A stretch of 64,000 nucleotides of DNA from Perna viridis (lineage: Eukaryota), in assembly GCA_037379345.1 (NCBI GenBank), contig CM074515.1:18662001-18726000 (forward strand), in the 5' to 3' direction. This document shows positions 1 to 63,824 of this stretch, piece after piece (position 1 is the stretch's first letter; each line of letters begins with the position of its first letter). The position numbers were made by a program, and so were the translations under genes. Under the pieces are notes generated by a model. It saw only the letters and a program-made list of their open reading frames with translations. It ran no database searches and had not been told where the DNA came from.

Positions 1-33
1 CTTGTTGATAAGTTCTTCCCTTGTAAATACATC
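1..33 (-). CDS. Exon 67 (partial): VWC module 29 start
   Basis: attgtag|GA TGT ATT TAC AAG GGA... = GCIYKGRTYQQ, runs off the window. Confidence 0.85.
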
Positions 34-3000
34 CTACAATGATATGTCATCCATTAAAGGAAGTAGACTTTGGGTAAGGAACATAACTCTTGAAATCAGT
101 TGTACGTTTGCATCATATTCAATTTCAACAAAGCCTATCAAGCTTTCATTCGAAATACTGTGAAAGTACCATAATTCATGGATACCAATTTTTGGTTTGC
201 CTACCCATAAAAACCATGAAAGTTGGTACCCAACGCACAATAGTACTTTCACAGTAGAATAAAAACAAGTTACTTTGATGCTTAGAAGAGATTAACGTAA
301 AATGCTTAACACAAACGTTGCAATGATTTGTAAGAGTGTCCCTTATCCTAGGTCTACCTCCTTAAGCAGTTTACAGACAGGAATACATAATAATCTTATT
401 CAATGACATCGTTTTACACTGCTAAATGAGAGCTTTGTTCGATTTTTTTGGGAAAGTTTTTTTACTCAAAACTGTCTTATGTATACTTTTTCCACTCTTC
501 GAAAAGCCCATTTCCACTTAACCAGCATATATAGACATAAACAGTGTATTGATTTGAAATAAAAACAATATATGAATTAGGTTTAGAATTGGGGTAAAAG
601 GTGAGGCTCTGTGGAGCAATTTTCCTATTCCTGCCGAATTTGTATATTGTTTTATTTCCATTCAATACACTGTTTAGTCTTTTGACTTTATACTGCAATC
701 CTCATCCTTATAAATCTAGCTTAAGTTTATATGAAGTGTAAATTTAATTTTGTCCCTACTATAGTATCCCCGATAGTGTTGCTGCTATATACAGGTAGTT
801 CATTCAAAGATAGAAAAGCAGGCTGAAATAAAATGTTATATACTGTAAGTACATCATCAATAAATATACTGTCAATACATTTTGGTTGCTCAAGTAGAAT
901 AATTGCAGTATAAATGATCAACATTAATGTAACAGAAGAACAACTATTTACCCTGTCTGCTACCAGACATACTGGTGTAATTACCAGAACCAGAGAATTG
1001 ATAGTTATAATTTGGCCCAAATCCAGTATATCCATTTGGTAATGAACCAATTATAGTGTATTGTGTTTGAGTCTTCAGTGGGTTGACAATTTCTCCGGTC
1101 TCTAGTGTACATCTTGGTTGGTTACAACATTGTCCATCCACCTTCTGTAGGAAACATTTGTTGGATGGCAGATTATTGTAAACAGGACACCTAAAATAAG
1201 ACAAATATATATATATAAAATGTAAAAGCAATGTGTGGCAAACATACATATGTAATCTGTATTATATATACAGTACATTTTTGTACAACACATGAGAAAA
1301 CTTTGGCATCCATACATTGATAACTGACAAAAGATCACAATAATGTTCCATCTTGCCATCAACACACTGACTACATTGTACTTACAATGGATCACAATAT
1401 TAAATACCTTGTGTTGCCTGCCACACACCGACTAAATTGTACTTACAATGGATCACAATATTAAATACCCTGTGTTGCCAGCCACACCGACTACATTGTA
1501 CTTACAATGGATCACAATATTAAATACCTTGTGTTGCCTGCCACACACCGACTACGTTGTACTTACAATGGATCACAATATTAAATACCCTGTGTTGCCT
1601 GCCACACACCGACTAAATTGTACTTACAATGGATCACAATATTAAATACCTTGTGTTGCCTGCCACACACCGACTAAATTGTACTTACAATGGATCACAA
1701 TATTAAATACCTGTGTTGCCTGCCACACATCGACTAAATTGTACTTACAATGGATCACAATATTAAATACCCTGTGTCGCCAGCCACACATCGACTACAT
1801 TGTACTTACAAATGGATCACAATAATACCCTGTCTTGCCACCCACACACTGACTAAATTGTACCTACAATGGATCACAATAATATCCCGTGTTTCCACTC
1901 ACACAATGACTATATTGTACTTACAATGGATCACAATAATAATATCCTGTCTTGCCATCCATACATTTACAGTTGTATTCACATCCATCCTTCCACGTCT
2001 CACCTTCATTGAACAACAAATACTTTTCTGGAGTTGTTCCAGTAGCTTTCTGGTGGAAAATACACTGACCTAAAAAAAACCAAAAAACAACACAAAAATT
2101 CATATTCATGTGAAAGATGCAGAACTGTTAAAGACATTTTATTACAAATTATCAAAAATTACATATAAATCACATTCCAATAAAAAAAAATGATTAAAAA
2201 GTGCTTGAAATTGCAATCAAATGTTTTCTATAAGATTAAGTTTTATTTAACAGGTTTTAAAATATGCAATCTTTTTAATTTCAATTTATTGGAGTTCTTC
2301 CTGTTGGACATATCATCATTTCCACATACCAAAGCCCTCCACAAAAATTGCTTATGTTCAGCCTGTAAAACGCAACCAAATTTGTTACAACTTAGCAGGA
2401 TTACTGTTAATTTTGTGGTTGCTAATTTTCACAGATTCTATCACATGAACAAATCTGAGAGTAATAATCTATGCGATTTCAAAAAAAAATTAGCCTTATT
2501 TAATGTTAAAATCAATTATGCTGCTATTATTTTTTCAGTTTTCTGTCTACAGTGGAAATAGCAAAAATTAGGATGTTTCCAGTATTTTAATTAATGTACA
2601 AGGGAATTTATATAGAATTTTGCTGTGATAATGTTTGATATGTCAAAGTCAGTGTATGATTATTTTATTCCACTAAACCTCATGAATTTTTTTTCAAGAT
2701 GCAGATAGATTTCTAATTTTGTTCCAATTCTGTTGATGTTTAAAAGAAGGAAATCAGTAGAACAGTTTCGTCAAATTCAGAATATTGATCTTCTGTAAAG
2801 TCTGTATTTCAATATTACCACATGGACTGTGGTCAATATTTATGAATTGATTCAAATTTCCTACTTACTTCTCACTTGTGAAAACTGTTGTTGAAGTATA
2901 GGGAAACCCCCTCCTGGTAATACAGGTGCATCAGTAGGTTTGGCTGTAGCAATGACAATTTGACCTGGTCTGGAAGATACTACAACTAAACCAGTAGGAG

Positions 3001-6000
3001 CTGGTGTAGCTATGACTTCACCTGGTGGTTTGTATGATACCCCTGGGATATCACATTGAACTTTAGCACAACATTGTCCAGGGATAACTACCTTTTTACA
3101 GTATGTAGGTAGAGGATCAGGAAGTGAAGGACACCTGTAAACATAAAAGCTTTCTATTACCTAACTGATATAAATACCATAAAAGACTATTAAATAAATA
3201 TTCATTCTTACTGGATAAAATTATGTAAAGCCTTACTTGAAATCAACATTATTTTTAGATCTTTATTAATATCCAGTATGGTTCTGTCTAAAAACAAGAC
3301 ATGGGGTAATTCCACCATTCCTTAAAATAATCAATGAGTGTTCAAATGCATTAGTTAGGCCCTTAAAACAACCCTTCCTATGTTCATTTCCTCAGATTTA
3401 CTATAAATTATGAAACTTTTTTGACTGTTTATAGTGTAAGTATTCTGGCTAGAATTTTCCCGTACTTTTATGTAGTGATACGTTATAAAATTTTCAGTGT
3501 TAATACTTCCAGTGGGCAACTTTCATCCTTCTGAAGGATTTTCAATTAAAAATATTTGGTATTAAGAAATATATGAATCACAAATCATAATAATAAAGAC
3601 TTGTCTACATCGACAAACTCCAAATGTATATGAAATTTGTTATCTTTCACAAATGACATTTTGCAACTGATTTACATAAATAAAAATGAAAAAAAAACTT
3701 ACACTAATATGTTTTTTTTTGGAAAACATGCCAATCTTTGAGGTATGCATAGTTATTTTGGGCAATTTAACTTGAAAAAGGTGGTGAACACCCCTTTGAA
3801 GTAGGTAAGTGACAAACACATGTCACATGTCAACAGTGTCGAAGGTCAAAACCCATTAAACAATGGCTCATAAATATCTTAAATTTGAGATTAGCCCAAC
3901 CACAGAAACCACAAAAAATTGGAACCCAAAGAACAATAGTGCTTTCATAGTAGTCCCAATGCACTTTTCTCCAATAATCAAAAAGTATCATTAAAAATGT
4001 AGCTAATTTTCCTTAATGGACAAATAATGAGATAATATGTATACTGTAATTTGATTGGTTCATAAAAAAGATGCTACATTAATAACTTACTTAGAAATAC
4101 ATTCATACTGTCCAGATTGGGCATCTTTACATGTACAGACGTACTGACATCCATCATCCCAAGACTGTCCCTGCTTGTACACAACACTCTTGTAAACACA
4201 TGCTCCAAAACCTTTAAAAAAAACATTAACGTTTTGATTAAGATGTGGATAATCAACATAATTGTACTCACATACTTTACACAATACATAAATCTATCAC
4301 TTTCTGAAAACATGTTCAAAGAAAAGAAAATAAAATCAGTAAAATTGACATTATTTCTGTTCTTAATTAGTTCTAAAACAATAGCTACTTCCTCTTGTGG
4401 TATAAAATTGTCTGCAAAGTATCTTTACCTAATTCTTAGTACTTTTCACATGCTTAAAGACAATATTTTGTTGATGAGTCTTGAATTTTATAAATTGCTC
4501 ACAAGAATCTGTCCCACAACTTCAATCTCATTTTATCTCAAATAAAATACTTTTGCTTTACCTCCATTTCCATTGAATGTACTTGTTCCAGGTTTCTGCC
4601 AATTATTACCAAAGATCAGTTGGTATTGTCCTACTGGCACAATGTTAAGTTTTCCTGGTTTTGGTGTAACATTTGATGATCCATTGAAAGTATTAAAGTA
4701 TGGATTAAGTGGAATGTTTGTTCCTGTGGCTACACATCGAGGTATATAACAACATCTATCGTTTGGATCTTGGACAAGAGTACATTGTGAAGGCAGGGAC
4801 CCAAATAGTCGGCATCTGTAATCAAAATACAGTAGTATAGAATATAACATCAGTCATATTATACTCATATGTAATACCTGCGATGAACCCCAGATATGAA
4901 AGTAGGTTAAAATACAAGAGGTTCTAAGATACCTCAATTGCTCATCAAGGTGCTGCAAAATACACAAGTTATTTTAATTACAAGTAAGACCAGAACAAAC
5001 CACTTAATCACCAAGTTTAGTCATCATGGGTTCAGTATTAGCAGAGATGTAAACCAGAATAAGTATCTATAAAGTGTTACAATGGACGTTTGTAGTGGCT
5101 GTCTGAATTAATTGAAAAGTGGTTTTTGTTGATGGAATTCAGATCATTGACCCCATGAAGTTCAAAAATTAAAGCCCCTCTAGTTTAAGAGGAGTTGACC
5201 TTAGAAAAGGACCTATCAGAATCTTACAAAAGCCATACAGTTCAAATGTTAATTCAGTGTAGAAGTCCTCCCTTTTATCGATTACTACTGACCAAACACC
5301 AGCAGAATATGTTTCTCCATAAGTTCAGGAGTGGACTGAAGTCAATGTCAATACCAAACTTAGATAAAATATTGCACATTGTTCATTATACAGTACATGA
5401 AATGGCCTCTGGTAGTTATCATGTTCAATCAAGCAGAACTAAAAGTTGATCATTTGTATTAGACCACTGAAATATCATTCCTTCCAAGTTTCATTAAAGT
5501 CTACCCAACATATTGTTAAAAGTTGATCTTTAACAAAATGATAATAAAAGAAAACAGAATATAGACAATTGAAGATGCATAACTCTTTAGTGGTTAACTG
5601 ATGTTCACATGGACCAGGTTAGCTAACAACTAAAGCTAATATGAAAGGGATCCTATGTCCTTAAAAGCCCTAAAATTTAAAAGGACATTTTATAGAACTG
5701 AATGTGATACTAGGCCAAAAACAAAATTATAAGAGCACACAAGAAGTTGATACATGATTAAGCCAAAAAGCCATCAAGCTGAAGTAAAAATTTTATTTTT
5801 GCCATTATATACTGCCAAGATTTGGACCATGGAAATGAATGAAAATCTGAAAAACAACCTGAGCATTATAACAAACAGAATACTGAAATGTGTCCAAGCT
5901 AAAAATGCTAATCCACTTAAAAAAAGTCAGGTAGAAGCTACTATAAAATTGCAATTACTGTAAACATACTAATTTTTGGGGTTGCTTTTTTAGAGAATTT

Positions 6001-60000: not shown

Positions 60001-63000
60001 CCGATGTACAGAAAAAAATACTTCTACTCACGTGACTGGAAGTCGATTGATGATTGAACTGAAAAAAAAAGAAATGACAATATCAATTTACGATGAAATT
60101 CAGTTAGATATCATTCATTCGTCTAATAAATATTATGAACATGTTACGCAATGGCCTTTTGTGACACTAAAAGAACGACATATTTTAAACAGTTCACAAT
60201 GTTCCGAAGTTTTACGCATTATTTCAATTTGATACTGTCTATGAGTCAGAAATAATAAACTTTAAATCCTTACCTCCACAAGCCATACTCATCAGTTGGT
60301 TTGAGACAGTTTCTAACTGATCATAGCTATTGACAGTAATCGTATGAGTAGCAGCCGGCTGGTCGACGATCTGGTTGAGTTCCGCCATATTTACACCAGA
60401 ACCTACTCCTATTCCCAACATACCAATGTGAGACTGTCTAGCTTGGTTAGCTTGATTGATGGCAGCACTGACTTCTGCAGTTCCTCCGTCAGTAACCATT
60501 ATGGCAATTCTGGGAACATTTGATCTGGCTCCACCTTGTGGGGAAAACATTGTTGTCCTAGCAAACTCTATGGCGTCTCCGGTATTGGTTCCTCCTCCTA
60601 GAAGCTGCATGCCGTGGATAGCCCTCATGATGTCATATCTATTATCATACATTCGGAGTGGAAATTCAGAGGAAGGTCTACTACTGTACTGTTCTAGACC
60701 AACATGGACTCCATCTTTTCCAACATTAAGTTTTGTGACGAAGTTTTTGATGAAGTTCTCTGTTTTCTCAAGGTTGAGTGTTCCTACACTACTGGAAGAG
60801 TCTACCATGAAGACAACATCCGCTTTCTGTAGACAGCCTATAACGTCAGTGACAGGAAAAAGAAGGGCGGTGAATATGAATCAATATGCTGTATAATGTT
60901 CTATGGTCTGTAATTTCCTAAGTTTATCACACACAATTTGGTTTTGAAGGAAATTATTTTTGTACGCAAAGATTACGAAAGGTCAATAGTTATATTTTTG
61001 TACTGTTTGACGTATGTAACTTAAATGCGTTCTCTACATAAAACAAAATGTTACGGAGCTAACTTATGCATGTCAGTATCTTAATTCTTGAATACTTGGT
61101 GGACAAAAGGAAAGAGTTATGAACGAAAGCAATGGCTATTGAACTTCAGTATGGTGAATGATTAAGATATACATACCGGTTGGTGGTGGGAGTAGATATT
61201 TGCTTTGCACCTCTGAAAAGTATAAAAATAACCTGGTGTTACATATTCAAAGGACAACTAATAATGCACTTACATATTGTTTTAATTAATTACTCTTTTT
61301 TCCGCAACTTGTTACATGTAGGGTTACAATGCCATTATCTTTGGTATCACTTAGAATGGTTAACTAAGAATCAACTCATTACTCTTTATAGTTAAAGCGA
61401 GTATGGACACCTTTGTAGCAATTTACTGTTTCGAAAGTGACAAAATTTGAGGTTAACTGACCATTACAGATCTTTGTGGCTAGAAGGTCAGACAGACTGT
61501 TGAGTGAGTTGAAGTTGTCAGCAGTGAGGAAATATCTTGAGTCTGGATTACTGGAAACAGATTTCAGCTCATCTGTATCAATACCATTACCAACGCCGAC
61601 GGTATAAATGAGAATATCATTGTCTTTAGCTGTCTGGGCTTTTAGTTTAGTTATCTCCCTTGTTACTGACGGACCGTCCGTGACAAGTACCATAACGTGA
61701 GGAACACCACCTCTCGCTCCATGGTTCGGCATGAACGATGTTTGCGTGACATATGTAATGGCATCGCCTGTATCTGCCGATCCAGGTAAATATTTAATAC
61801 CCGAGATGGCATTCAGTACGTCTGCCTTGGTGGCATAATTGTTCAAGAAGAACTGATTATGCACACCAGAACTGTACGTCACTGCACTTATTTGCACTTG
61901 ATCTCGCCGTACATCTAAACTATTTACTGTGTTTTTAACAAAGTCCAGTTGTTTAGCAAAGTTTGTTTGTCCGACAGAATCAGAGGAATCTAACACAAAA
62001 GTTACATCTGCCTTTGTTGAACAACCTGAAAAACAACAAATATAATCTTTAACAGGTATAGAAATTTAAATATGTCGTTTTAATTATCAATTTAGATGAA
62101 AAAAAAAAACAAGTGACACTGCGCATGACATTATGTAAATGTATGTGTGACAGAAAATGTAGTTTTACACCGTGTAATCAATGTATGTTCCAGACAAAAA
62201 CAAATTAAATATCACTCCAGCTAAGTATCATGGAAACGCGATACATGGTTGGAAAGCATGCATATTTTTATTTTTCATATTCTGATTAAAATGTCATAGT
62301 AAACAGAAATTAACATGTTATTTTTCATATAACCCCTGCTCTTAGGAGATAAAAATATATAGAATGTACTGTACAATTTAAAATCAAGGTAGATAACTCT
62401 GTAAATGACACTTAAATACAACCGAAACTGTTGAATTTTCAATATGGATTATCTCCTAAGAGCAGACAGATTGGAATAAATAATTATACATTTCATAATA
62501 TAGACCTATAAAGCAACTTAATAACAAAAATAAAGTTGTGTAGCCTTTTTGGGGTGTATCACAATTTACAGAATTTGCATAATTCTTACAAAGACTGCTA
62601 CTTAAATACTAGAAAATAAAAAAAAATCTTCGAGGGTAAAATCAAATGCTAAATGTAGATTTTTAAATTATGTTTGGCGTGATCACTTAAAGTGTCAGTT
62701 TCTGTGAGAATCAGGCAATGGGTGCAACATGGTATTAATAAAAACCATCATTTGACTATTTGCAACATCAGAATCAAGAAAAAAAGACAATATTTTCCAT
62801 ATCTTGTTGGTTCATGGAGTTTTAATTTCATTAAAATGCACTGAAAATGAACATTTCAAGGGCAGATAACTGTGTCTCTAACATTTTATTGAAAAATATC
62901 TGAGCAAATCCAGTGATGCAAAGATTGAAAATGGTCTTTTCAAAGAGAAGGTATCCTTGAATGATATTACAATGTCAGATCGGTGGGGTTTTGACACGCA

Positions 63001-63824
63001 TGTTTCTGATTTTTCCCATTTTGCCTGATTCTTACGAACACTTACACTTACTATCCAAATATATTTTCTATTATTACTATACAGTTATGATTAACACCAA
63101 CATACACTTCTTGTTTCACTAAAAACATCGATTTTATTTTTGTGATCCTAATAAGAGACTCGATCATATGTTACACAAGGATTTCTTGTTTTTGTACGCC
63201 TAAAAATATTATCAGCGAGGGATCTTAACAGGTGAAAGATAAGACTATCCTACATTTTCAGTACGCAGTTAAGGGCTATGTTCCACTAAATTAGATCTAA
63301 GGTCAAGTATTTCTAACTTCTTATCAGCTTATTGGTGATTATAATTGGGTAATGAAACATCGAAGTTCTTCTTAAGACTATCACATCAAAGTTTATCTTT
63401 TAAAGAATATTTCATTTAAACTGCTAAATTTAGCAATGCATGGACATCAAATCAAACGACAATTCAGGAAAAAAAAGTTACAATTTAATAATTAAACGTG
63501 CGAATTTCAATTAATTTTTTGTTTTTGAATATTTTATCGTGTTTTTCAAAGTGTTCATATAAGGTTTAGAAACTCCCTCAAATACAATGTACATATTAAA
63601 CAAATTTACACAATCAAGTTATACAGTAGCCCTTACAGAGATAAAAAAAATCAGGACATGAGATATTAGTAAAACATATTCGTGACACTTAGATAAAAGA
63701 GTGTGGTTCATATGATAGAAGACATCTAACATTATATAATAAAATACTGACCTGCTGCATTCGAAAGCGTCACCGTCTGATAGACGGCGACTGTCCAAAG
63801 AATGAGCGCTATAGCGCTCCTCAT
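1..63824 (-). CDS. Giant secreted multidomain protein (signal peptide, 2x VWA, 3x ShK, at least 29 VWC-like modules with Pro/Thr-rich linkers); multi-exon, 3'-partial
   Basis: 67 exons traced manually with AG/GT boundaries. Exon lengths and phases chain in frame with no junction stop codons. About 11,420 coding nt in the window. Domain calls come from Cys spacing and MIDAS motifs. Confidence 0.93.
156..256. mobile_element. Short TA-flanked MITE (TIR tactgtgaaagtac)
   Basis: Perfect 14-nt inverted ends; related longer copy from ~13545 and a right-end fragment at ~3900-3952. Confidence 0.75.
952..1190 (-). CDS. Exon 66: VWC module 28, C-half + linker
   Basis: CPVYNNLPSNKCFLQKVDGQCCNQPRC... 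Confidence 0.88.
1335..1960. repeat. ~60-bp minisatellite (about 10 copies) derived from the exon 65 3' end and donor
   Basis: cttacaatggatcacaat recurs at 1381, 1442, 1501, 1562, 1623, 1684, 1744, with variants at ~1805 and ~1863, then the real junction at 1920. Confidence 0.92.
1925..2069 (-). CDS. Exon 65: VWC module 28, N-half (10-aa insertion)
   Basis: CIFHQKATGTTPEKYLLFNEGETWKDGCEYNCKCMDGKTGYYYC; 145 nt. Confidence 0.88.
2869..3134 (-). CDS. Exon 64: VWC module 27, C-half + linker
   Basis: CPSLPDPLPTYCKKVVIPGQCCAKVQC...; GTAAGT donor; missed by the ORF track. Confidence 0.87.
4091..4211 (-). CDS. Exon 63: VWC module 27, N-half
   Basis: CVYKSVVYKQGQSWDDGCQYVCTCKDAQSGQYEC; 121 nt. Confidence 0.88.
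4562..4815 (-). CDS. Exon 62: VWC module 26, C-half + linker
   Basis: CRLFGSLPSQCTLVQDPNDRCCYIPRC... Confidence 0.87.
6383..6497 (-). CDS. Exon 61: VWC module 26, N-half
   Basis: CVYKNQVHMQGSTWEDGCDLKCTCEDAKMNVYQC; 115 nt. Confidence 0.9.
7745..7960. repeat. 48-bp tandem repeat (about 4 copies) spanning the exon 60 donor
   Basis: Donor-containing units at 7933, 7885, 7837, 7788. Confidence 0.9.
7934..8109 (-). CDS. Exon 60: VWC module 25, C-half + linker
   Basis: CPQYYNLPAYCHYEPDPTDACCRKPKC...; GTAAGA donor. Confidence 0.9.
9250..9364 (-). CDS. Exon 59: VWC module 25, N-half
   Basis: CVYKGRSYTQGQKWDDGCDYRCECIDAIRGRYKC; 115 nt. Confidence 0.9.
9384..9711. mobile_element. TTAA-flanked non-autonomous DNA element
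   Basis: ttaagtatcattctgtgtaagaatcaggcaatg ... cattgcctgattctta; related element at 62687-63050. Confidence 0.65.
10532..10776 (-). CDS. Exon 58: VWC module 24, C-half + linker
   Basis: CPVFNNIPNSCTLVTDRNDPCCTVPQC...; GTAAGC donor. Confidence 0.9.
10868..11042. repeat. 33-bp tandem (3-4 copies), likely MITE remnant
   Basis: aaccctgaataatccaaaaacctgtcta repeated; inverted related copy at ~36318-36388. Confidence 0.7.
11123..11237 (-). CDS. Exon 57: VWC module 24, N-half
   Basis: CVYQGVYYTQGQTWDDGCDKRCRCDDVSTGLYSC; 115 nt. Confidence 0.9.
11205..11450. repeat. ~55-bp tandem repeat copying the exon 57 acceptor and 5' end
   Basis: ataatacacaccttggtacacacagt...tagcctgaaatacatac about 4 times. 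Confidence 0.88.
12120..12343 (-). CDS. Exon 56: VWC module 23, C-half + P/T linker
   Basis: CQTYPNLPPFCTLVENPKDKCCPVPYC... Confidence 0.85.
12412..12914. mobile_element. Truncated TA-CAGT MITE followed by the 3' part of a TTAA-flanked element
   Basis: Start resembles the 48092 element; 12600-12914 matches the 51316 and 62205 elements, ending gactgctacttaa. Confidence 0.6.
13352..13463 (-). CDS. Exon 55: VWC module 23, N-half
   Basis: CLYMGRSFTQGQMWEDGCQYRCECVNEMIGQYKC; 112 nt. Confidence 0.9.
14327..14736. mobile_element. TTAA-flanked MITE (piggyBac/Kolobok-type target site)
   Basis: ttaa|gtagcagtc...aactggtac|ttaa with imperfect ~27-nt TIRs; sister copies at 36696-37087 and ~18660-18895. 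Confidence 0.7.
14800..15730. repeat. Degenerate 57-bp minisatellite (about 15 copies) derived from the exon 54 3' end and donor
   Basis: gtttactaacctggctttggtgtaggtggtggcatgatagc units; actaacc at 15079, 15250, 15421 (171-bp spacing). Confidence 0.88.
15678..15964 (-). CDS. Exon 54: VWC module 22, C-half + P/T linker
   Basis: CARYDSLPAGCTLVADPKDPQCCKVPQC...; GTGAGT donor. Confidence 0.9.
16195..16430. repeat. ~30-bp degenerate minisatellite
   Basis: gagtgtagcaacctaaatattgtgatcac-like units, about 8 copies. Confidence 0.8.
16560..16674 (-). CDS. Exon 53: VWC module 22, N-half
   Basis: CMYNGVAYRQGQQWYDGCDQVCRCENAMSGFYRC; 115 nt. Confidence 0.9.
16893..17089 (-). CDS. Exon 52: VWC module 21, C-half + P/T linker
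   Basis: CERHPQIPSFCTLVQDPKNACCQTVFC... Confidence 0.88.
17572..17686 (-). CDS. Exon 51: VWC module 21, N-half
   Basis: CVYNGQIYRQGQKWKDGCLFECECFDEQTGRYRC; 115 nt. Confidence 0.9.
18072..18229. repeat. ~158-bp near-perfect palindrome (foldback element)
   Basis: taagaattggcta...tattgtttat [agtgcgaagtgca] ataaacaata...tagccaattctta. Confidence 0.85.
19410..19609 (-). CDS. Exon 50: VWC module 20, C-half + linker
   Basis: CPTYPPLKAGCQLLTDPNDQCCQAPLC... Confidence 0.87.
19810..20290. repeat. ~40-bp minisatellite
   Basis: aaaaagctc..ccttcagtcacaacccctggtacaagct units, about 12 copies. Confidence 0.85.
20392..20506 (-). CDS. Exon 49: VWC module 20, N-half
   Basis: CIYNGIPYRQGQTFNVGCEKRCRCDDADNDIINC; 115 nt. 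Confidence 0.9.
21097..21565. mobile_element. CACAG-type MITE remnant with palindromic ttcacatgaa units, adjoining a partial CTGT-type MITE
   Basis: tacacaggcag start, repeated ttcacatgaaattcatgt; 21380-21565 resembles the 23568 and 51222 MITE body and ends acagta. Confidence 0.55.
22085..22236 (-). CDS. Exon 48: VWC module 19, C-half + linker
   Basis: CSDMTNIPPTCKLKYNPQDPCCPLPDC...; GTAAGT donor. Confidence 0.9.
22385..22745. repeat. 32-bp minisatellite (about 11 copies)
   Basis: agtgtttaacattaccattctcctccttggtt, with an alternative acagtgtc variant. Confidence 0.92.
22844..23170. mobile_element. MITE with ~27-nt TIRs (cacaggaa...gcaacatatgtttt)
   Basis: cacaggaaaaaatgcaacatatgtttt ... 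aaaacatatattgcaattattcctgtg. Confidence 0.65.
23172..23250 (-). pseudogene. Degenerate partial duplicate of exon 47 (pseudo-exon)
   Basis: WQDGC, frameshift, ..CQYGYTKRGLHK* directly after the real donor; mirrors WQDGCKYTCQCEDAKRGLHKC. Confidence 0.8.
23261..23375 (-). CDS. Exon 47: VWC module 19, N-half
   Basis: CIYNGNFYQQGQKWQDGCKYTCQCEDAKRGLHKC; 115 nt. Confidence 0.9.
23568..23778. mobile_element. TA-flanked MITE (tactgtaaac...aacagta)
   Basis: Inverted termini; uninterrupted relative of the 51222-51817 element. Confidence 0.7.
23788..23902. repeat. 23-bp tandem repeat (5 copies)
   Basis: ttcattgattattttatatttg(c/t). Confidence 0.9.
24400..24900. repeat. Degenerate ~38-bp minisatellite with a recent 26-bp triplication
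   Basis: aattgact..ttggagagtaaaaatacagac units; aattgacttgtcggagggaccaaat x3 at ~24611-24690. Confidence 0.75.
24946..25151 (-). CDS. Exon 46: VWC module 18, C-half + linker
   Basis: CPQYDTQPNCIMIPDPSDPECCKKPQC...; GTAAGA donor. Confidence 0.9.
25635..25749 (-). CDS. Exon 45: VWC module 18, N-half
   Basis: CTYKGRTYTQGQAWYDGCDMKCVCTNGMTGVYQC; 115 nt. Confidence 0.9.
26129..26346 (-). CDS. Exon 44: VWC module 17, C-half + P/T linker
   Basis: CAKFPQLPAGCIMVTDVNDPCCRVPSC... Confidence 0.87.
28157..28271 (-). CDS. Exon 43: VWC module 17, N-half
   Basis: CEYKGVRYSTGQKWRDGCDYNCVCVDGMSGVYQC; 115 nt. Confidence 0.9.
28908..29102. mobile_element. Interspersed SINE-like repeat, copy 1
   Basis: Clearly similar to 41014-41270 (gagcaactcggactccactaaaaactgggagcatggaccaggtgcacc). 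Confidence 0.7.
30052..30386 (-). CDS. Exon 42: VWC module 16, C-half + P/T linker
   Basis: CPTYPNLPVGCTSQTDPNDPCCQIPVC + PTPYTGAPTxA repeats; GTAAGT donor. Confidence 0.9.
30805..30915. repeat. ~38-bp tandem (3 copies)
   Basis: aaaccaccctctccattggagtgggggtataaaacagt. Confidence 0.85.
30965..31279. mobile_element. CACAG-type MITE with internal catatgataat palindromic repeats (partial)
   Basis: Homologous to 48680-48965; right end tggcacatttacctgtgta. Confidence 0.7.
31443..31557 (-). CDS. Exon 41: VWC module 16, N-half
   Basis: CVYYGVLYKQGQTWDQGCQKKCRCDDATNNYYTC; 115 nt. Confidence 0.9.
32524..32747 (-). CDS. Exon 40: VWC module 15, C-half + P/T linker
   Basis: CPSWPANLPGGCSLVQDPKDFCCKSVVC...; GTGAGT donor. 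Confidence 0.9.
32901..33015 (-). CDS. Exon 39: VWC module 15, N-half
   Basis: CVYKGVQYKTGQRWQDGCDYNCICEDGMTGHYTC; 115 nt. Confidence 0.9.
33354..33600 (-). CDS. Exon 38: VWC module 14 last Cys + P/T linker
   Basis: IPSCIPPNQTPGPSGSP...KPPTPMPKP; 247 nt, phase 0-1; ttttcacag acceptor. Confidence 0.88.
34662..34846 (-). CDS. Exon 37: VWC module 14, fused N-half + most of C-half
   Basis: CVYKGVPYTQGQQWYDGCDKICVCENGMTGYIRCRQRCTTYAPSQGCTMVPDPKDPQCCQ; 185 nt, phase 1-0, GTATGG donor. Confidence 0.9.
35153..35478 (-). CDS. Exon 36: VWC module 13, C-half + P/T linker
   Basis: CQDYSNLPRPSYCNLVADPRNPCCKVIQC...; GTAAGT donor. Confidence 0.9.
35893..36007 (-). CDS. Exon 35: VWC module 13, N-half
   Basis: CQYKGVKHQQGEKWDDGCSLECECLDDHTGQYRC; 115 nt. 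Confidence 0.9.
36401..36633 (-). CDS. Exon 34: VWC module 12, C-half + P/T linker
   Basis: CPQWPQLPSGCYLTTDPNDQCCKKPIC... Confidence 0.85.
36696..37087. mobile_element. TTAA-flanked MITE, sister of 14327-14736
   Basis: ttaaataccagtctttataaaaatcaga ... gactggtacttaa. Confidence 0.7.
37466..37580 (-). CDS. Exon 33: VWC module 12, N-half
   Basis: CMYNGVPFKQGQTWNDGCDLKCICEDATTGFYRC; 115 nt. Confidence 0.9.
38080..38237 (-). CDS. Exon 32: VWC module 11, C-half + linker
   Basis: CVEYTDLQPGCRLVVDYTNPCCKKPYC... Confidence 0.88.
38615..38729 (-). CDS. Exon 31: VWC module 11, N-half
   Basis: CVYKGKTYTPGQQWQDGCQYDCECLDNLGNYRC; 115 nt. Confidence 0.9.
40048..40394 (-). CDS. Exon 30: VWC module 10, C-half + P/T linker
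   Basis: CPQLPQVDSSCTMQPDPKDPLCCKVPLC...; GTGAGT donor. Confidence 0.9.
40648..40762 (-). CDS. Exon 29: VWC module 10, N-half
   Basis: CVYKGIAYTQGQQWYDGCEFSCVCEDGTTGVYRC; 115 nt. Confidence 0.9.
40860..40972. repeat. ~26-bp tandem (4 copies)
   Basis: cctttaaatcactggccctgtgact. Confidence 0.88.
41014..41270. mobile_element. SINE-like repeat copy 2 with a nested 53-bp insertion
   Basis: Colinear with 28908-29102 except for the extra 41101-41153. Confidence 0.72.
41472..41803 (-). CDS. Exon 28: VWC module 9, C-half + P/T linker
   Basis: CPVYNNLPSTCRLVKNPRKPCCQIPEC + TPYTGPPTQAPPV-type repeats. Confidence 0.87.
42257..42371 (-). CDS. Exon 27: VWC module 9, N-half
   Basis: CIYKGREYTQGQAFEDGCDYDCVCFNANEGRYRC; 115 nt. 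Confidence 0.9.
42509..42741 (-). CDS. Exon 26: VWC module 8, C-half + P/T linker
   Basis: CAPLDPNVPEGCSVMTDPRDPCCLAQFC... Confidence 0.87.
43069..43183 (-). CDS. Exon 25: VWC module 8, N-half
   Basis: CIYKGVSYLQGQVWEDGCSFKCRCDDSSRGIYTC; 115 nt. Confidence 0.9.
43815..44105. repeat. Degenerate ~53-bp minisatellite
   Basis: gagaacctgacatct...atctccatggctgtc units. Confidence 0.65.
44233..44390 (-). CDS. Exon 24: VWC module 7, C-half + linker
   Basis: CPVYVDLKPGCTMVRDFANPCCEKPQC...; GTAAGT donor. Confidence 0.9.
45039..45162 (-). CDS. Exon 23: VWC module 7, N-half
   Basis: CIYKGQAYKNGDIWEDGCDFTCQCEDEIKGTYSC; 124 nt. Confidence 0.88.
45436..45599 (-). CDS. Exon 22: VWC module 6, C-half + linker
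   Basis: CPEYPLSTGADCKLIRDPRDPTCCEMRVC... Confidence 0.85.
46177..46291 (-). CDS. Exon 21: VWC module 6, N-half
   Basis: CSYNGEFYQQGQTWYDGCSYRCTCEDAENGIYRC; 115 nt. Confidence 0.9.
47169..47311 (-). CDS. Exon 20: VWC module 5, C-half + linker
   Basis: CVHYSNLPIGCYLIQDPENPCCKVPRC...; GTGAGT donor. Confidence 0.9.
47300..47455. repeat. ~45-bp tandem copying the exon 20 acceptor
   Basis: cacacctacaggcacat..cagt units x3 upstream of the real acceptor (acacacctaaag). Confidence 0.65.
48092..48677. mobile_element. Tc1/mariner-type MITE (TA|CAGTCAAAC...GTTTGATTG|TA)
   Basis: TA flanks, CAGT-starting TIR, internal ttcgag/ctcgaa repeats, CpG retained. Confidence 0.8.
48680..48965. mobile_element. 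TA-flanked CACAG-type MITE with catatgat palindromic units
   Basis: tacacagccaaatgtttcaca ... tgtggcaaatttgcctgtgta. Confidence 0.75.
49008..49122 (-). CDS. Exon 19: VWC module 5, N-half
   Basis: CSYGGKRYNVGEKWDVGCQYNCICDDGQQGHYTC; 115 nt. Confidence 0.9.
49576..49850 (-). CDS. Exon 18: VWC module 4, C-half + linker
   Basis: CPTYQGMTPTCVLSTDPNDPCCRAPKC...; phase 2-1. Confidence 0.85.
50091..50205 (-). CDS. Exon 17: VWC module 4, N-half
   Basis: CLYNGKVYTQNQAWMDGCSKYCVCVDATKGQMSC; 115 nt. Confidence 0.9.
50380..50540 (+). mobile_element. 3' fragment of a retroposon with a (CAAT)n tail
   Basis: Ends ttaaaccccaaaaatcaatcaatcaatc, the same tail as the 41101 and 51947 inserts; left boundary uncertain. 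Confidence 0.5.
50850..51088 (-). CDS. Exon 16: VWC module 3, C-half + linker
   Basis: CPKYTNLPSGCSMVKQNGECCAHAQC...; GTGAGT donor. Confidence 0.88.
51222..51817. mobile_element. TA-flanked MITE interrupted by a nested TTAA element (51316-51719)
   Basis: Outer tactgtaaac...gtttacagta matches the 23568 copy; inner element matches 62205-62605. Confidence 0.8.
51947..52005 (+). mobile_element. 59-bp mini-retroposon with a 15-bp target-site duplication
   Basis: gatattctttccatt at 51932-51946 and 52006-52020; hairpin body plus caat tail. Confidence 0.8.
52145..52259 (-). CDS. Exon 15: VWC module 3, N-half
   Basis: CVYSGKAYKQGEVWAPSCSERCHCENARYGYYRC; 115 nt. Confidence 0.9.
53447..53476 (-). CDS. 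Exon 14: 30-nt microexon (CPSTQQAGPN)
   Basis: attttag acceptor, GTAGGT donor; its first two bases complete the sixth ShK Cys (T|GT). Confidence 0.85.
53898..54020 (-). CDS. Exon 13: ShK domain 3
   Basis: CLDLVTCSNYGSDVCTTYRDWAMKNCRNTCNF(C); 123 nt; last Cys codon split by the intron. Confidence 0.9.
54770..54909 (-). CDS. Exon 12: VWC module 2, C-half + linker
   Basis: CPSYTVLPQVCHLEQTPGQCCKQPVC...; GTAAGT donor. Confidence 0.9.
55537..55651 (-). CDS. Exon 11: VWC module 2, N-half
   Basis: CVYKGKQYYQDQSWADGCDYQCTCTNAQQGTYQC; 115 nt. Confidence 0.9.
56045..56650. repeat. 39-bp minisatellite (two blocks, ~56045-56280 and ~56560-56650) derived from the exon 10 donor
   Basis: cctgaattatcagcattacaaatgatttacctatcccaa vs real junction ttagcattaaaaataattcacctattccaa. 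Confidence 0.8.
56640..56782 (-). CDS. Exon 10: VWC module 1, C-half + linker
   Basis: CPVYYNLPSMCTLVRKQGGCCLEPVC...; phase 2-1. Confidence 0.88.
57520..57637 (-). CDS. Exon 9: VWC module 1, N-half
   Basis: CAYKGKVHSPGEKWYDGCDYECVCQDGASGKYQCYNR; phase 1-2. Confidence 0.9.
58541..58567 (-). CDS. Exon 8: 27-nt microexon (SVTAVTGGF)
   Basis: tttttag acceptor, GTAAGT donor, phase 1-1. Confidence 0.7.
58950..59075. mobile_element. ~125-bp foldback MITE
   Basis: ccttttcacaaaaaatcgtaagtgtaaaatta ... taattttactcttacgatttttttgtgaaaagg. Confidence 0.8.
59267..59395 (-). CDS. Exon 7: ShK domain 2
   Basis: CSDVLSDCASYGKAACTQYAKWAGDNCKQYCGLC; 129 nt, GTAAGT donor. Confidence 0.9.
59636..59755 (-). CDS. 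Exon 6: ShK domain 1
   Basis: CKDKINNCHEYGTKVCNDYQGWASENCKAFCGKC; 120 nt, GTGAGT donor. Confidence 0.9.
60032..60058 (-). CDS. Exon 5: 27-nt microexon (VQSSIDFQS)
   Basis: Poly-T cag acceptor, GTGAGT donor, phase 1-1. Confidence 0.7.
60274..60837 (-). CDS. Exon 4: VWA domain 2
   Basis: CLQKADVVFMVDSSSSVG...GGGTNTG...MVTDG...MACG; 564 nt, phase 1-1. Confidence 0.95.
61177..61212 (-). CDS. Exon 3: 36-nt linker microexon (EVQSKYLLPPPT)
   Basis: ttttcag acceptor, GTATGT donor, phase 1-1. Confidence 0.75.
61462..62025 (-). CDS. Exon 2: VWA domain 1
   Basis: CSTKADVTFVLDSSDSVG...VLVTDG...KICN; 564 nt, phase 1-1; tttcag acceptor, GTCAGT donor. Confidence 0.95.
62205..62605. mobile_element. TTAA-flanked non-autonomous DNA element
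   Basis: ttaa|atatcactccagctaag ... cttacaaagactgctac|ttaa; copies at 51316 and ~12600. Confidence 0.75.
62687..63050. mobile_element. TTAA-starting MITE related to 9384-9711
   Basis: gagaatcaggcaatggg ... ttgcctgattcttac inverted ends. Confidence 0.6.
63752..63824 (-). CDS. Exon 1: signal peptide MRSAIALILWTVAVYQTVTLSNAA
   Basis: ATG at 63824, hydrophobic core, small residues at the cleavage region, phase-1 donor G|GTCAGT. Not in the ORF track in this frame. Confidence 0.88.

What the first reader, a model, noticed from the sequence alone, without database searches (positions are those of the whole stretch)
1..63824. Giant secreted VWA-VWA-ShK-ShK-(VWC + mucin-like linker)n protein, over 3,800 aa and still open
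Seen: signal peptide, two VWA domains, three ShK domains and 28 complete 10-Cys VWC-like modules spaced by Pro/Thr-rich linkers, continuing past the window. Known: tandem VWA pairs bind collagen and matrix, as in the mussel byssal protein PTMP1 and in matrilins. VWC arrays occur in kielin/chordin, VWF and gel-forming mucins. P/T tracts are typically O-glycosylated. I do not recognise a named protein with this combination. Inference: an adhesive head on a beads-on-a-string glycosylated rod, a candidate uncharacterised molluscan mucus, adhesive or matrix polymer.
Basis: partly seen in the sequence, partly recalled or inferred. Interest (0 to 1): 0.8.

Follow-up and report, generated by a model that had tools for sequence, protein, structure and literature searches.

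The report
Giant mussel VWA–ShK–31×VWC matrix protein
The window holds most of one 73.5-kb mussel gene for a secreted protein of about 4,160 residues (two VWA domains, six ShK domains, 31 VWC "beads" joined by proline/threonine spacers); the same 31-bead design is predicted, but never studied, in bivalves and gastropods.

Summary
On the minus strand lie a signal-peptide exon (ATG 63824), two Pfam VWA exons, three ShK exons and 28 complete 10-Cys VWC modules. Each module is split into two exons at the same phase-2 position.

I closed the gene outside the window. It has 74 coding exons, all AG/GT, totalling 12,489 nt (4,162 aa), and stops 9.7 kb beyond window base 1. Its layout is SP–VWA2–ShK2–VWC2–ShK–VWC27–ShK3–VWC2–short tail. 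There is no cystine knot, VWD domain or TM helix.

The best match by linker pattern is LOC143080130, so this is one gene.

About 30 giant mollusc proteins share the design, all named "uncharacterized" or "mucin-2-like". Sixteen of those counted, from bivalves and gastropods, have exactly 31 modules, and linker lengths are conserved position by position.

The module is a true VWC fold (CCN3 and collagen IIA hits). The VWA pair is closest to collagen VI and byssal PTMP1.

Function is inferred: a long extracellular rod or tether with a matrix-binding head, not a classical gel-forming mucin. No RNA evidence could be obtained. The gene is an orthologue of annotated but unstudied genes. The fixed 31-bead count is the interesting part.

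The parts
63752..63824 (-). Coding exon 1: start codon and signal peptide (24 aa + 1 nt, phase-1 donor)
   Evidence: Sequence; ORF; 83% identical to residues 1-24 of Mytilus P0185/P0190.
61462..62025 (-). VWA1 exon (564 nt, phase 1-1), MIDAS residues intact
   Evidence: Pfam VWA 153.5 bits. 81% identical to Mytilus P0185 residues 26-212. PDB best matches are collagen VI alpha3 and PTMP1 at E=2.4e-32.
61177..61212 (-). Micro-exon a (36 nt, EVQSKYLLPPPT), the VWA1-VWA2 linker
   Evidence: AG/GT, phase 1-1; matches Mytilus 'EVPGANVLPPAT'.
60274..60837 (-). VWA2 exon (564 nt, phase 1-1), MIDAS residues intact
   Evidence: Pfam VWA 138.4 bits; 79% identical to P0190 residues 226-412; PTMP1 E=4.1e-40.
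60032..60058 (-). Micro-exon b (27 nt, VQSSIDFQS)
   Evidence: Sequence; matches Mytilus 'VQTSINFFQ'; frame check.
59636..59755 (-). ShK1 exon (six Cys)
   Evidence: Pfam ShK 19.6 bits, gathering score 20.9; sequence.
59267..59395 (-). ShK2 exon (six Cys)
   Evidence: Pfam ShK 16.6 bits; sequence.
58541..58567 (-). Micro-exon c (27 nt, SVTAVTGGF)
   Evidence: Matches Mytilus 'TSAALTGGF'.
56640..57637 (-). VWC module 1: exon A 57637-57520, exon B 56782-56640
   Evidence: 82-84% identical to P0190 residues 513-598.
54770..55651 (-). VWC module 2: exon A 55651-55537, exon B 54909-54770
53898..54020 (-). ShK3 exon (first five Cys; the sixth Cys codon is split T|GT across the intron)
   Evidence: Pfam ShK 20.2 bits; sequence; 85% identical to P0190 residues 685-724.
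53447..53476 (-). Micro-exon d (30 nt, CPSTQQAGPN); its first two bases complete the sixth Cys of ShK3
   Evidence: Matches Mytilus 'CPSSQVSGPN'.
35153..52259 (-). VWC modules 3-13, given as A exon / B exon. 3: 52259-52145 / 51088-50850. 4: 50205-50091 / 49850-49576. 5: 49122-49008 / 47311-47169. 6: 46291-46177 / 45599-45436. 7: 45162-45039 / 44390-44233. 8: 43183-43069 / 42741-42509. 9: 42371-42257 / 41803-41472. 10: 40762-40648 / 40394-40048. 11: 38729-38615 / 38237-38080. 12: 37580-37466 / 36633-36401. 13: 36007-35893 / 35478-35153.
   Evidence: Exon table with phases, AG/GT sites and 5+5 Cys per module. Each exon hits its positional counterpart in Mytilus.
33354..34846 (-). VWC module 14. 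The A/B intron is lost: exon 34846-34662 carries nine Cys. A new phase-0 intron follows, then exon 33600-33354 (IPSC + linker).
   Evidence: Pfam VWC 20.5 bits, gathering score 27.6, for the 9-Cys piece. AF2 model pLDDT 86.6. Foldseek top hits are the CCN3 and collagen IIA VWC domains.
952..33015 (-). VWC modules 15-28, given as A exon / B exon. 15: 33015-32901 / 32747-32524. 16: 31557-31443 / 30386-30052. 17: 28271-28157 / 26346-26129. 18: 25749-25635 / 25151-24946. 19: 23375-23261 / 22236-22085. 20: 20506-20392 / 19609-19410. 21: 17686-17572 / 17089-16893. 22: 16674-16560 / 15964-15678. 23: 13463-13352 / 12343-12120. 24: 11237-11123 / 10776-10532. 25: 9364-9250 / 8109-7934. 26: 6497-6383 / 4815-4562. 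27: 4211-4091 / 3134-2869. 28: 2069-1925 / 1190-952.
   Evidence: table; colinearity; linker lengths match Mytilus LOC143080130, rho 0.99.
1..33 (-). First 33 nt of the VWC module 29 A exon. The rest of the gene lies outside the window, at negative window coordinates: 29A to -78; 29B+ShK4 -490..-746; ShK5 -1894..-2049; ShK6 -4452..-4595; VWC30 -5656..-5764 and -6226..-6317; VWC31 -6553..-6664 and -9586..-9703 (stop).
   Evidence: Flanking DNA fetched.

Best explanation
SHOWN. This is one intact protein-coding gene on the minus strand. It has 74 coding exons spanning 73.5 kb from ATG to stop, and encodes 4,162 aa with 350 Cys. It belongs to a mytilid mussel and is the orthologue of Mytilus galloprovincialis LOC143080130/LOC143080127. 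The product runs: signal peptide, two MIDAS-bearing VWA domains of the collagen-VI/PTMP1 type, two ShK domains, two VWC modules, one ShK, 27 VWC modules, three ShK, two VWC modules, and a short conserved tail (...PYVITGYPDE). Every VWC bead of about 65 aa and five disulfides is followed by a Pro/Thr/Gly-rich, nearly uncharged spacer of 20-87 aa.

INFERRED. The protein is secreted and its spacers are probably O-glycosylated and extended. That would give a semi-rigid rod roughly half a micrometre long. Its N-terminal VWA pair would bind collagen or another matrix partner through the metal site. Its disulfide-locked VWC beads would offer repeated protein-binding surfaces. I read it as a structural tether or filament of the molluscan extracellular (possibly apical) matrix, in which length and spacing matter. 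The reason is that the number of beads (31) and the length of individual spacers have been kept across bivalves and gastropods. The tissue of expression and the binding partners are unknown.
For: - Gene model: all 73 introns have canonical sites, there is no internal stop, and phases are consistent.
- Domains: Pfam VWA at 153.5 and 138.4 bits, and ShK-like exons.
- VWC fold: a profile of the module hits the CCN3 VWC structure 5nb8 at E=7e-7 with all ten Cys aligned. The AF2 model (pLDDT 86.6) best matches the CCN3 and collagen IIA VWC domains.
- Single gene: 70 of 70 exons map colinearly on Mytilus P0185 from residue 1 to the last residue, and 69 of 70 on P0190. Comparison with Mytilus then revealed four micro-exons that repair the ShK3 sixth Cys.
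- Family: 32 giant relatives, whose precomputed Pfam lists hold mainly VWA, ShK and VWC, with TSP1 and a few others in the shorter ones.
- Fixed design: exactly 31 modules in 16 of the 36 family proteins counted, spanning protobranch to heterodont bivalves and vetigastropod to caenogastropod snails.
- Linker spacing: rank correlation of linker lengths is 0.99 with Mytilus-130, 0.96 with scallop, 0.84 with oyster and 0.3-0.6 with distant molluscs. Linkers 3 and 4 stay within 52-63 aa and 63-71 aa everywhere.
- Module age: modules within the protein are only 44-48% identical to each other, but A exons are 80-90% identical to their Mytilus counterparts. The array is therefore old and each bead is individually constrained.
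- C-terminus: no CTCK, VWD or TM segment.
Against: - There is no transcript or protein evidence for this species.
- Tissue, glycosylation, rod shape and binding partners are all inferred.
- ShK exons and the single contiguous VWC piece score just below Pfam gathering thresholds.
- In some lineages one linker has expanded to 480-1,866 aa. Length is therefore not absolutely fixed, and a mucin-like role is possible there.
Confidence: 0.6

Rival explanations
1. It is a mucus gel-forming, mucin-like polymer: heavily O-glycosylated P/T tracts hydrate the gel and the Cys-rich domains cross-link the chains.
For: - Linkers are P 23.8% and T 15.8%.
- Some relatives are auto-named 'mucin-2-like'.
- VWC domains also occur in MUC2 and VWF C-terminal regions, which appear in the Foldseek list.
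- Single linkers are hyper-expanded to 480-1,866 aa in oyster, Dreissena, Mya, Haliotis and Gigantopelta.
- 'Mucin' and 'collagen' are the top animal proteins of a shipworm crystalline style (PMC8561940). VWC and ShK annotations are enriched in a mytilid digestive gland (PMC5549309). Neither paper is shown to concern this family.
Against: - No VWD/C8/TIL assemblies and no C-terminal cystine knot in this gene or in the Pfam lists of its relatives.
- Ser+Thr is only about 21% of the linkers.
- The bead number is fixed at 31 and linker lengths are conserved by position. I would not expect that of fast-varying PTS repeats (my inference).
Confidence: 0.15
2. It is an extracellular BMP/TGF-beta modulator or growth-factor reservoir of the kielin/chordin/CRIM1 type, with the VWC beads binding ligands.
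For: - The module is a chordin-type VWC.
- Octopus relatives are auto-named 'cysteine-rich motor neuron 1 protein-like'.
- From general knowledge, VWC arrays in chordin, CV2 and KCP bind BMPs.
Against: - No VWD domain as in KCP and no TM segment as in CRIM1.
- A third of the protein is P/T spacer and there is a collagen-VI-like VWA head, which points to a structural role.
- There are no binding data. A modulator would not obviously need 31 beads with fixed spacing.
Confidence: 0.1
3. It is a byssus, foot-adhesive or shell-matrix component specific to attachment or biomineralisation, i.e. a PTMP1-like head on a Lustrin-A-like modular body.
For: - PTMP1 is the best single-protein PDB match of both VWA domains.
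- 'Kielin/chordin-like' fragments are enriched in the quagga-mussel adhesive footprint (PMC12993968).
- Multi-VWC proteins are found in the Argonaut eggcase matrix and in the Crassostrea gigas shell (10.1101/2021.07.10.451900 and PMC5854119).
Against: - The same 31-module gene is present in non-byssate gastropods, and Aplysia with its reduced shell has close relatives with 27 modules counted.
- Linkers are neither Tyr/Lys-rich (Y 4.4%, K 3.4%) nor acidic (D+E 2%).
- None of the proteomic hits is shown to be this family.
Confidence: 0.12
4. It is an artefact: two or more neighbouring genes (a VWA/ShK gene and a VWC array), or a decaying pseudogene array, joined by eye.
For: No RNA evidence was obtained for this genome. 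Phase 1-1 exons join in frame by their nature.
Against: - Full colinearity with independently predicted proteins of many species, from signal peptide to stop.
- The first VWC exon opens at a splice acceptor, not at a start codon. The micro-exon enumeration of the 1.6-kb ShK2-VWC1 intron listed no start-plus-signal-peptide exon, although it was not designed to find one.
- All 350 Cys and all 146 splice sites are intact, and there is no stop in 12.5 kb of coding sequence.
Confidence: 0.03

Closest known systems
Predicted orthologues: Mytilus galloprovincialis LOC143080130 (4,236 aa) and LOC143080127 (4,076 aa); Crassostrea virginica LOC111134355; Ylistrum balloti LOC132560404; and others in Haliotis, Littorina, Gigantopelta, Ruditapes, Dreissena, Mya and Solemya
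   Same: Identical domain order, 31 VWC modules, the same micro-exon peptides, the same C-terminal tail and the same linker-length pattern. VWA1 is 81% identical and the signal peptide 83% identical to Mytilus.
   Different: These are database predictions named 'uncharacterized protein', 'hypothetical protein' or 'mucin-2-like'. No paper in the searchable library mentions the accessions or locus names I tried. In Mytilus the two copies lie on one contig. Here the closest paralogue is on another contig (C9, 87% identical in VWA1).
PTMP1 (proximal thread matrix protein 1, Mytilus byssus; PDB 4cn8) and the collagen VI VWA domains
   Same: A tandem pair of MIDAS-type VWA domains. These are the best PDB sequence matches (E=2.4e-32 and 4.1e-40 for PTMP1).
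   Different: PTMP1 is only the two VWA domains (454-residue chain). Collagen VI has a collagen triple helix. Neither has ShK domains or a VWC/P-T array.
Kielin/chordin-like protein (KCP), chordin, CRIM1
   Same: Arrays of chordin-type 10-Cys VWC domains in a secreted protein.
   Different: From general knowledge, KCP ends in a VWD domain, CRIM1 has IGFBP and TM parts, and chordin has CHRD domains. None has a VWA head, ShK domains or long P/T spacers between every VWC.
Gel-forming mucins and von Willebrand factor
   Same: VWC domains and P/T-rich stretches in a very large secreted glycoprotein. MUC2 C-terminal domains appear among the fold matches.
   Different: No VWD-C8-TIL assemblies and no cystine-knot dimerisation domain. 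The spacers are short and fixed rather than one huge variable PTS domain.
Lustrin A (abalone nacre matrix protein; Shen et al. 1997, cited in PMC5854119)
   Same: The design principle, recalled from the literature: Cys-rich modules alternating with Pro-rich spacers in a mollusc extracellular protein.
   Different: Lustrin's Cys-rich module is, from memory, a different Pfam family (Lustrin_cystein). No match to it appeared in any Pfam scan here. This is analogy, not homology.

Membership tests
VWA domain (Pfam PF00092) | Profile match above the gathering score | tested here: met
   153.5 and 138.4 bits against a gathering score of 23.8.
VWA domain (Pfam PF00092) | MIDAS residues DxSxS...T...D | tested here: met
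   LDSSDSVG / ADTGDA / VTDG in VWA1; VDSSSSVG / TNTGDA / VTDG in VWA2 (translations).
ShK domain (Pfam PF01549) | Six-Cys pattern and profile match | tested here: inconclusive
   The six-Cys spacing is present in all six copies. The three in-window exons score 16.6-20.2 bits, below the gathering score of 20.9. Relatives score above it (26.9-46.3 bits).
VWC / chordin-like cysteine-rich repeat (Pfam PF00093) | Ten conserved Cys with the C2xxC3xC4 and C8C9 motifs | tested here: met
   30 of 31 modules have 10 Cys. Module 30 has lost two: the second Cys and the last Cys of its B exon. That these two form one disulfide is my recollection of VWC structures, not tested here.
VWC / chordin-like cysteine-rich repeat (Pfam PF00093) | Profile or structure match to solved VWC domains | tested here: met
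   Pfam gives 20.5 bits (gathering score 27.6) for the 9-Cys contiguous piece. Relatives score 72-94 bits. The module profile hits CCN3 VWC 5nb8 at E=7e-7. The AF2 model's top Foldseek hits are 5nb8 and 5nir at probability 0.94-1.00 and TM about 0.6.
Gel-forming mucin / VWF type | VWD-C8-TIL assemblies at the N-terminus | tested here: not met
   The N-terminus is SP-VWA-VWA-ShK-ShK. The relatives' Pfam lists contain no VWD, C8 or TIL.
Gel-forming mucin / VWF type | C-terminal cystine knot (CTCK) for dimerisation | tested here: not met
   The protein ends in VWC31 plus a 12-residue tail, PAPYVITGYPDE, then the stop codon. The tail is conserved in relatives.
Kielin/chordin-like protein | VWC array followed by a VWD domain; BMP binding | tested here: not met
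   No VWD anywhere. BMP binding cannot be tested with these tools.
PTMP1-type byssal matrix protein | Two-VWA protein deposited in the byssal thread and binding collagen | not testable with these tools
   Sequence similarity of the VWA pair is shown. Location and collagen binding are untested, and the architecture is far larger.
Conserved molluscan VWA-ShK-31xVWC family (uncharacterised RefSeq/GenBank models) | Domain order A(n)-S-S-C2-S-C27-S3-C2-tail, 31 modules, colinear orthology | tested here: met
   70/70 exons colinear with P0185. Architecture strings. 31 HMM domains in 16 proteins. Linker-length rho 0.99.

The most novel reading that the evidence does not exclude
The family is a previously undescribed class of length-defined extracellular filament, a 'molecular ruler or tether' of Mollusca. 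It has exactly 31 VWC beads and position-specific spacer lengths, which on the usual view of the bivalve-gastropod split would date the design to the Cambrian or earlier. Its role would be comparable to fibrillin or Drosophila Dumpy, for example anchoring epithelia to matrix, cuticle, periostracum or shell. Shorter forms of 7-10 beads occur in brachiopods and cephalopods.
Probability: 0.25. Interest if true: 0.75.

Novelty: new variant of a known kind. Interest (0 to 1): 0.45.

Why it matters
Molluscs carry a conserved giant extracellular protein that nobody has studied and that automatic annotation scatters under misleading names: collagen VI-like, mucin-2-like, CRIM1-like, kielin/chordin-like.

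Repeat arrays normally gain and lose units quickly. Here the number of units and the lengths of individual spacers have been kept across bivalves and gastropods, which implies that the physical length and spacing of the molecule are under selection.

That makes a concrete, testable question about molluscan matrix, attachment or mucus biology. It may also explain the recurrent "multi-VWC" fragments seen in shell, eggcase and adhesive-footprint proteomes. For this window alone, the result is mainly a complete, checked gene model of an orthologue of already predicted genes.

Tried and rejected
- First gene model: it had 70 exons and left ShK3 with five Cys and a Tyr at the junction. Comparison with Mytilus showed four missed micro-exons, so the model was corrected.
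- Micro-exon b: I first misread it as 28 nt and out of frame. Re-reading one search shows 27 nt, in frame.
- Gigantopelta P0001 (4,135 aa, 31 modules): I suspected it was the same gene. It is a homologue at 63-66% identity per module and its model lacks the VWA head.
- Literature by accession or locus name: two searches were blank.
- Literature by domain words: only indirect leads.
- The search of earlier findings with four words was blank.
- The look-up of encoding contigs for the closest fragment P0020 gave only a 1-kb metagenome contig, which did not help name the species.
- The spliced full-length protein was not sent to any search, fold or family tool. All such queries were single exons by reference or database proteins by id.
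- Inside local scripts, the two exons of a module were put together only to count Cys and compare modules with each other. The module HMM was built from the database protein P0185.

Full report
**1. What is in the window**

The window is AT-rich (about 32% G+C) with no N runs. Six-frame translation shows 84 Cys-rich open segments on the minus strand against 30 on the plus strand. The minus-strand segments fall into an ordered series.

- An ATG at 63824 opens MRSAIALILWTVAVYQTVTLSNAAG and ends at a phase-1 donor.
- Two 564-nt exons score 153.5 and 138.4 bits against Pfam VWA and carry complete MIDAS residues.
- Three exons have the six-Cys ShK pattern. Pfam scores are 16.6-20.2 bits, just under the gathering score of 20.9.
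- Twenty-eight pairs of exons encode CxYxGxxYxQGQxWxDGCxxxCxCxxxxxGxYxC ("A", 5 Cys) and RCPxYxxLPxxCxLVxDPxDxCCxxPxC followed by a P/T-rich tail ("B", 5 Cys).

The splice geometry is the same in every module.
- The A exon is usually 115 nt. Its acceptor lies 5 nt before the first Cys codon.
- Its donor lies 8 nt after the last Cys codon, in phase 2.
- The B exon's AG lies exactly 1 nt before its first Cys codon.
- The B exon ends in phase 1 just before the first intronic stop.

Such regularity is far beyond chance. 3,807 codons lie inside the window.

**2. Closing the gene**

The window is G000:C5:18662001-18726000. I fetched 60 kb downstream of the gene and 20 kb upstream. The gene continues past base 1 as follows.

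- Module 29: A exon 33..-78; the B exon is fused to a fourth ShK, -490..-746.
- ShK5: -1894..-2049.
- ShK6: -4452..-4595.
- Module 30: it has lost the second and the last Cys of its B exon. From memory of VWC structures these two form one disulfide; that was not tested here.
- Module 31: its B exon ends ...CPAPYVITGYPDE-stop at -9703, with AATAAA 26 nt later.

A second copy of this terminal exon lies 2.36 kb further on (…PPPYVITGYPDI-stop, with its own AATAAA). It may be an alternative last exon. The next open frames downstream look like a rhodopsin-type receptor. There is no cystine knot, VWD or TM segment at the C-terminus.

A 61-residue contiguous piece of module 14 was searched against 1.8 billion representative proteins. 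It gave 340 hits, led by multi-module mollusc proteins. Their names are "uncharacterized", "hypothetical", or "collagen alpha-4(VI)/alpha-1(XII)-like".

A word search seeded with the Gigantopelta protein then returned 32 giant proteins of 2.3-5.7 thousand residues. They come from Haliotis, Solemya, Ruditapes, Littorina, Potamilus, Dreissena, Mya, Mytilus, Babylonia, Nucella, Ylistrum, Crassostrea, Mercenaria, Batillaria, Aplysia, Tegillarca, Elysia, Lingula and Argonauta.

The closest are Mytilus galloprovincialis LOC143080127 (P0185) and LOC143080130 (P0190). VWA1 is 81% identical and the signal peptide 83% identical. The window therefore comes from a mytilid mussel other than Mytilus itself.

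All 70 exons of my first model hit P0185 in strictly increasing order, from residue 1 to its last residue. On P0190 the figure is 69 of 70, on oyster 56 of 70 and on scallop 54 of 69.

Places where Mytilus had extra residues led me to four micro-exons with canonical sites:
- 61212-61177
- 60058-60032
- 58567-58541
- 53476-53447

The last one begins with GT. That completes the split codon of the sixth Cys of ShK3, which had looked missing. The final model has 74 coding exons, 12,489 nt, 4,162 residues, 350 Cys, no internal stop and all AG/GT sites. The median intron is 734 nt.

The spliced protein was never sent to a search tool. Searches used single exons by reference or database proteins by id.

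**4. One gene or two**

The case for a single gene rests on four points.
- Full colinearity with independently predicted proteins of many species, from signal peptide to stop.
- The first VWC exon opens at a splice acceptor rather than a start codon. The micro-exon enumeration of the 1.6-kb ShK2-VWC1 intron listed no start-plus-signal-peptide exon, although it was not built to find one.
- Conserved micro-exon peptides bridge the head and the array.
- Every exon is intact.

I put the two-gene or artefact reading at about 3%.

**5. What the module is**

Relatives pass Pfam VWC at 72-94 bits. A profile of module 14 plus single-module relatives (alignment A1) hits the crystal structure of the CCN3 VWC domain at E=7e-7, with the Cys aligned. 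An AlphaFold2 model of module 14 (pLDDT 86.6) finds CCN3 VWC and collagen IIA VWC as its best Foldseek matches, followed by MUC2 C-terminal domains. The module is a genuine chordin-type VWC.

Both VWA domains match collagen VI alpha3 and, as the best single small protein, the Mytilus byssal protein PTMP1 (E=2.4e-32 and 4.1e-40).

**6. The array is old and fixed**

Modules within the protein are only 44-48% identical on average (maximum 64%). Identity at module distances 4 and 8 is slightly higher than at odd distances (0.48 against 0.445), a weak period-2/4 signal. By contrast, each A exon is 65-97% identical to its positional counterpart in Mytilus.

A module HMM built from the Mytilus protein counts exactly 31 modules in 16 proteins. 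These are two Mytilus paralogues, oyster, scallop, Solemya, Ruditapes, Potamilus, Dreissena, Mya, Mercenaria, two Haliotis, Gigantopelta, Littorina and Babylonia. Lower counts occur in models flagged partial or fragmentary.

A second, shorter subfamily with 7-10 modules and more VWA domains, in some members with TSP1 domains too, exists in Lingula, Octopus, Argonauta, Haliotis, Aplysia and Batillaria.

The domain order A(n)-S-S-C2-S-C27-S3-C2 and a C-terminal tail of the form Y-x-I-x-Y-P-x-G-Y recur throughout.

Linker lengths are conserved position by position.
- Spearman rho against this gene is 0.99 for Mytilus-130, 0.96 for scallop, 0.91 for Mytilus-127 and 0.84 for oyster.
- It is 0.3-0.6 for distant bivalves and gastropods.
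- Linkers 3 and 4 stay within 52-63 and 63-71 residues in all 14 species.

Some lineages have blown up one single linker: 645 aa in oyster, 1,207-1,866 aa in Dreissena and Mya, and 480-1,642 aa in Haliotis and Gigantopelta. The 8-Cys module 30 is shared with Mytilus, oyster and scallop only.

**7. Linkers**

Linkers make up 1,423 residues, about a third of the protein. Composition is P 23.8%, T 15.8%, G 9.3%, S 5.5%, Y 4.4%, K+R 4.8% and D+E 2.0%. They are proline-rich and nearly uncharged. O-glycosylation is plausible but untested. Ser+Thr at about 21% is, by my recollection, modest for a mucin domain.

**8. Function**

Nothing is shown directly. The anatomy argues for a long extracellular rod whose length and spacing are selected:
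- a secreted protein with a MIDAS VWA pair like collagen VI and PTMP1;
- 31 disulfide-locked beads;
- stiff P/T spacers;
- no polymerisation domain;
- a fixed bead number.

I read it as a structural tether or filament of the matrix with a binding head.

Rivals are a mucus gel component, a BMP-binding reservoir, and a byssus- or shell-specific protein. Literature gives only leads.
- VWC and ShK annotations are enriched in a mytilid digestive gland (PMC5549309).
- "Mucin" and "collagen" dominate a shipworm crystalline style (PMC8561940).
- Multi-VWC "kielin/chordin-like" proteins occur in the Argonaut eggcase matrix and the oyster shell.
- The same kind of fragment is enriched in the quagga-mussel adhesive footprint (PMC12993968).

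None is tied to this family. Fragmented assemblies of a repetitive 12.5-kb transcript could produce exactly such multi-VWC fragments.

**9. Paralogues**

The VWA1 exon finds a close paralogue on contig C9 (87% identical, with a second VWA beside it). More distant ones lie at C5:47.37 Mb (61%) and on C15 (48%).

**10. Verdict**

- The gene is not unknown to databases, because full-length predicted orthologues exist in many molluscs. No member has been characterised or, as far as I could find, described.
- The new element from this work is the strict conservation of the 31-module count and of the spacer lengths.
- Interest is moderate (0.45). It would be higher if the ruler or tether reading proves true.

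Noticed in passing
window 1362-1961; 7783-7957; 14960-15685: Intronic minisatellites whose unit is a copy of the 3' end of the upstream coding exon plus its donor site. The first has a 61-nt unit in 9.9 copies and contains '...TATTGTGATCCATT|GTAAGTAC' from the end of exon VWC28_A. The second has a 48-nt unit in 3.6 copies and contains the end of exon VWC25_B, '...AAACCTCCAG|GTGAGA'. The third has a 57-nt unit in 8.5 copies and contains the end of exon VWC22_B, '...CCAAAGCCAG|GTTAGT'. Each copy carries a potential decoy donor site.
   Followed up: partly
outside the window, about -11796..-12091 in window coordinates (locus L005): A tandem duplicate of the last coding exon lies 2.36 kb beyond the first copy. 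It encodes ...CPPPYVITGYPDI-stop and has its own AATAAA 11 nt after the stop. It could be an alternative terminal exon or a relic.
   Followed up: partly
window 33354-34846: Module 14 has lost the phase-2 intron shared by the other modules and has gained a phase-0 intron inside the CCxxPxC motif. Metagenome-derived fragments P0017 and P0020 (82-85% identical) read into an intron at the same point, so related species share this state.
   Followed up: partly
window 50-365 and 526-900: Two interspersed repeats lie in the intron between modules 28 and 29. One is a unit of about 110 nt, present here as two adjacent copies and at many sites at 85-90% identity. The other is an element of about 360 nt with dozens of copies at 70-74% identity across the genome.
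   Followed up: no
window 28903-29130 and 41171-41287 (minus strand); also -16821..-17075: A repeated element carries the same open frame (...AEDAYPTGAPGPCSQFLVESELLI...) in three introns or flanks. It is probably a transposon fragment.
   Followed up: no
outside the window, -22913..-23395 and -42838..-43884 (minus strand): Open frames with rhodopsin-type 7TM features (…NLFLINLCVADLL…, …SIERYRVVC…). This is the next gene or genes downstream of the giant gene.
   Followed up: no
G000:C9:44267946-44269732; C5:47363346-47366331; C15:14193930-14197607: Paralogous VWA-VWA heads, 87%, 61% and 48% identical to VWA1. They are probably further members of the same giant-gene family in this genome.
   Followed up: no
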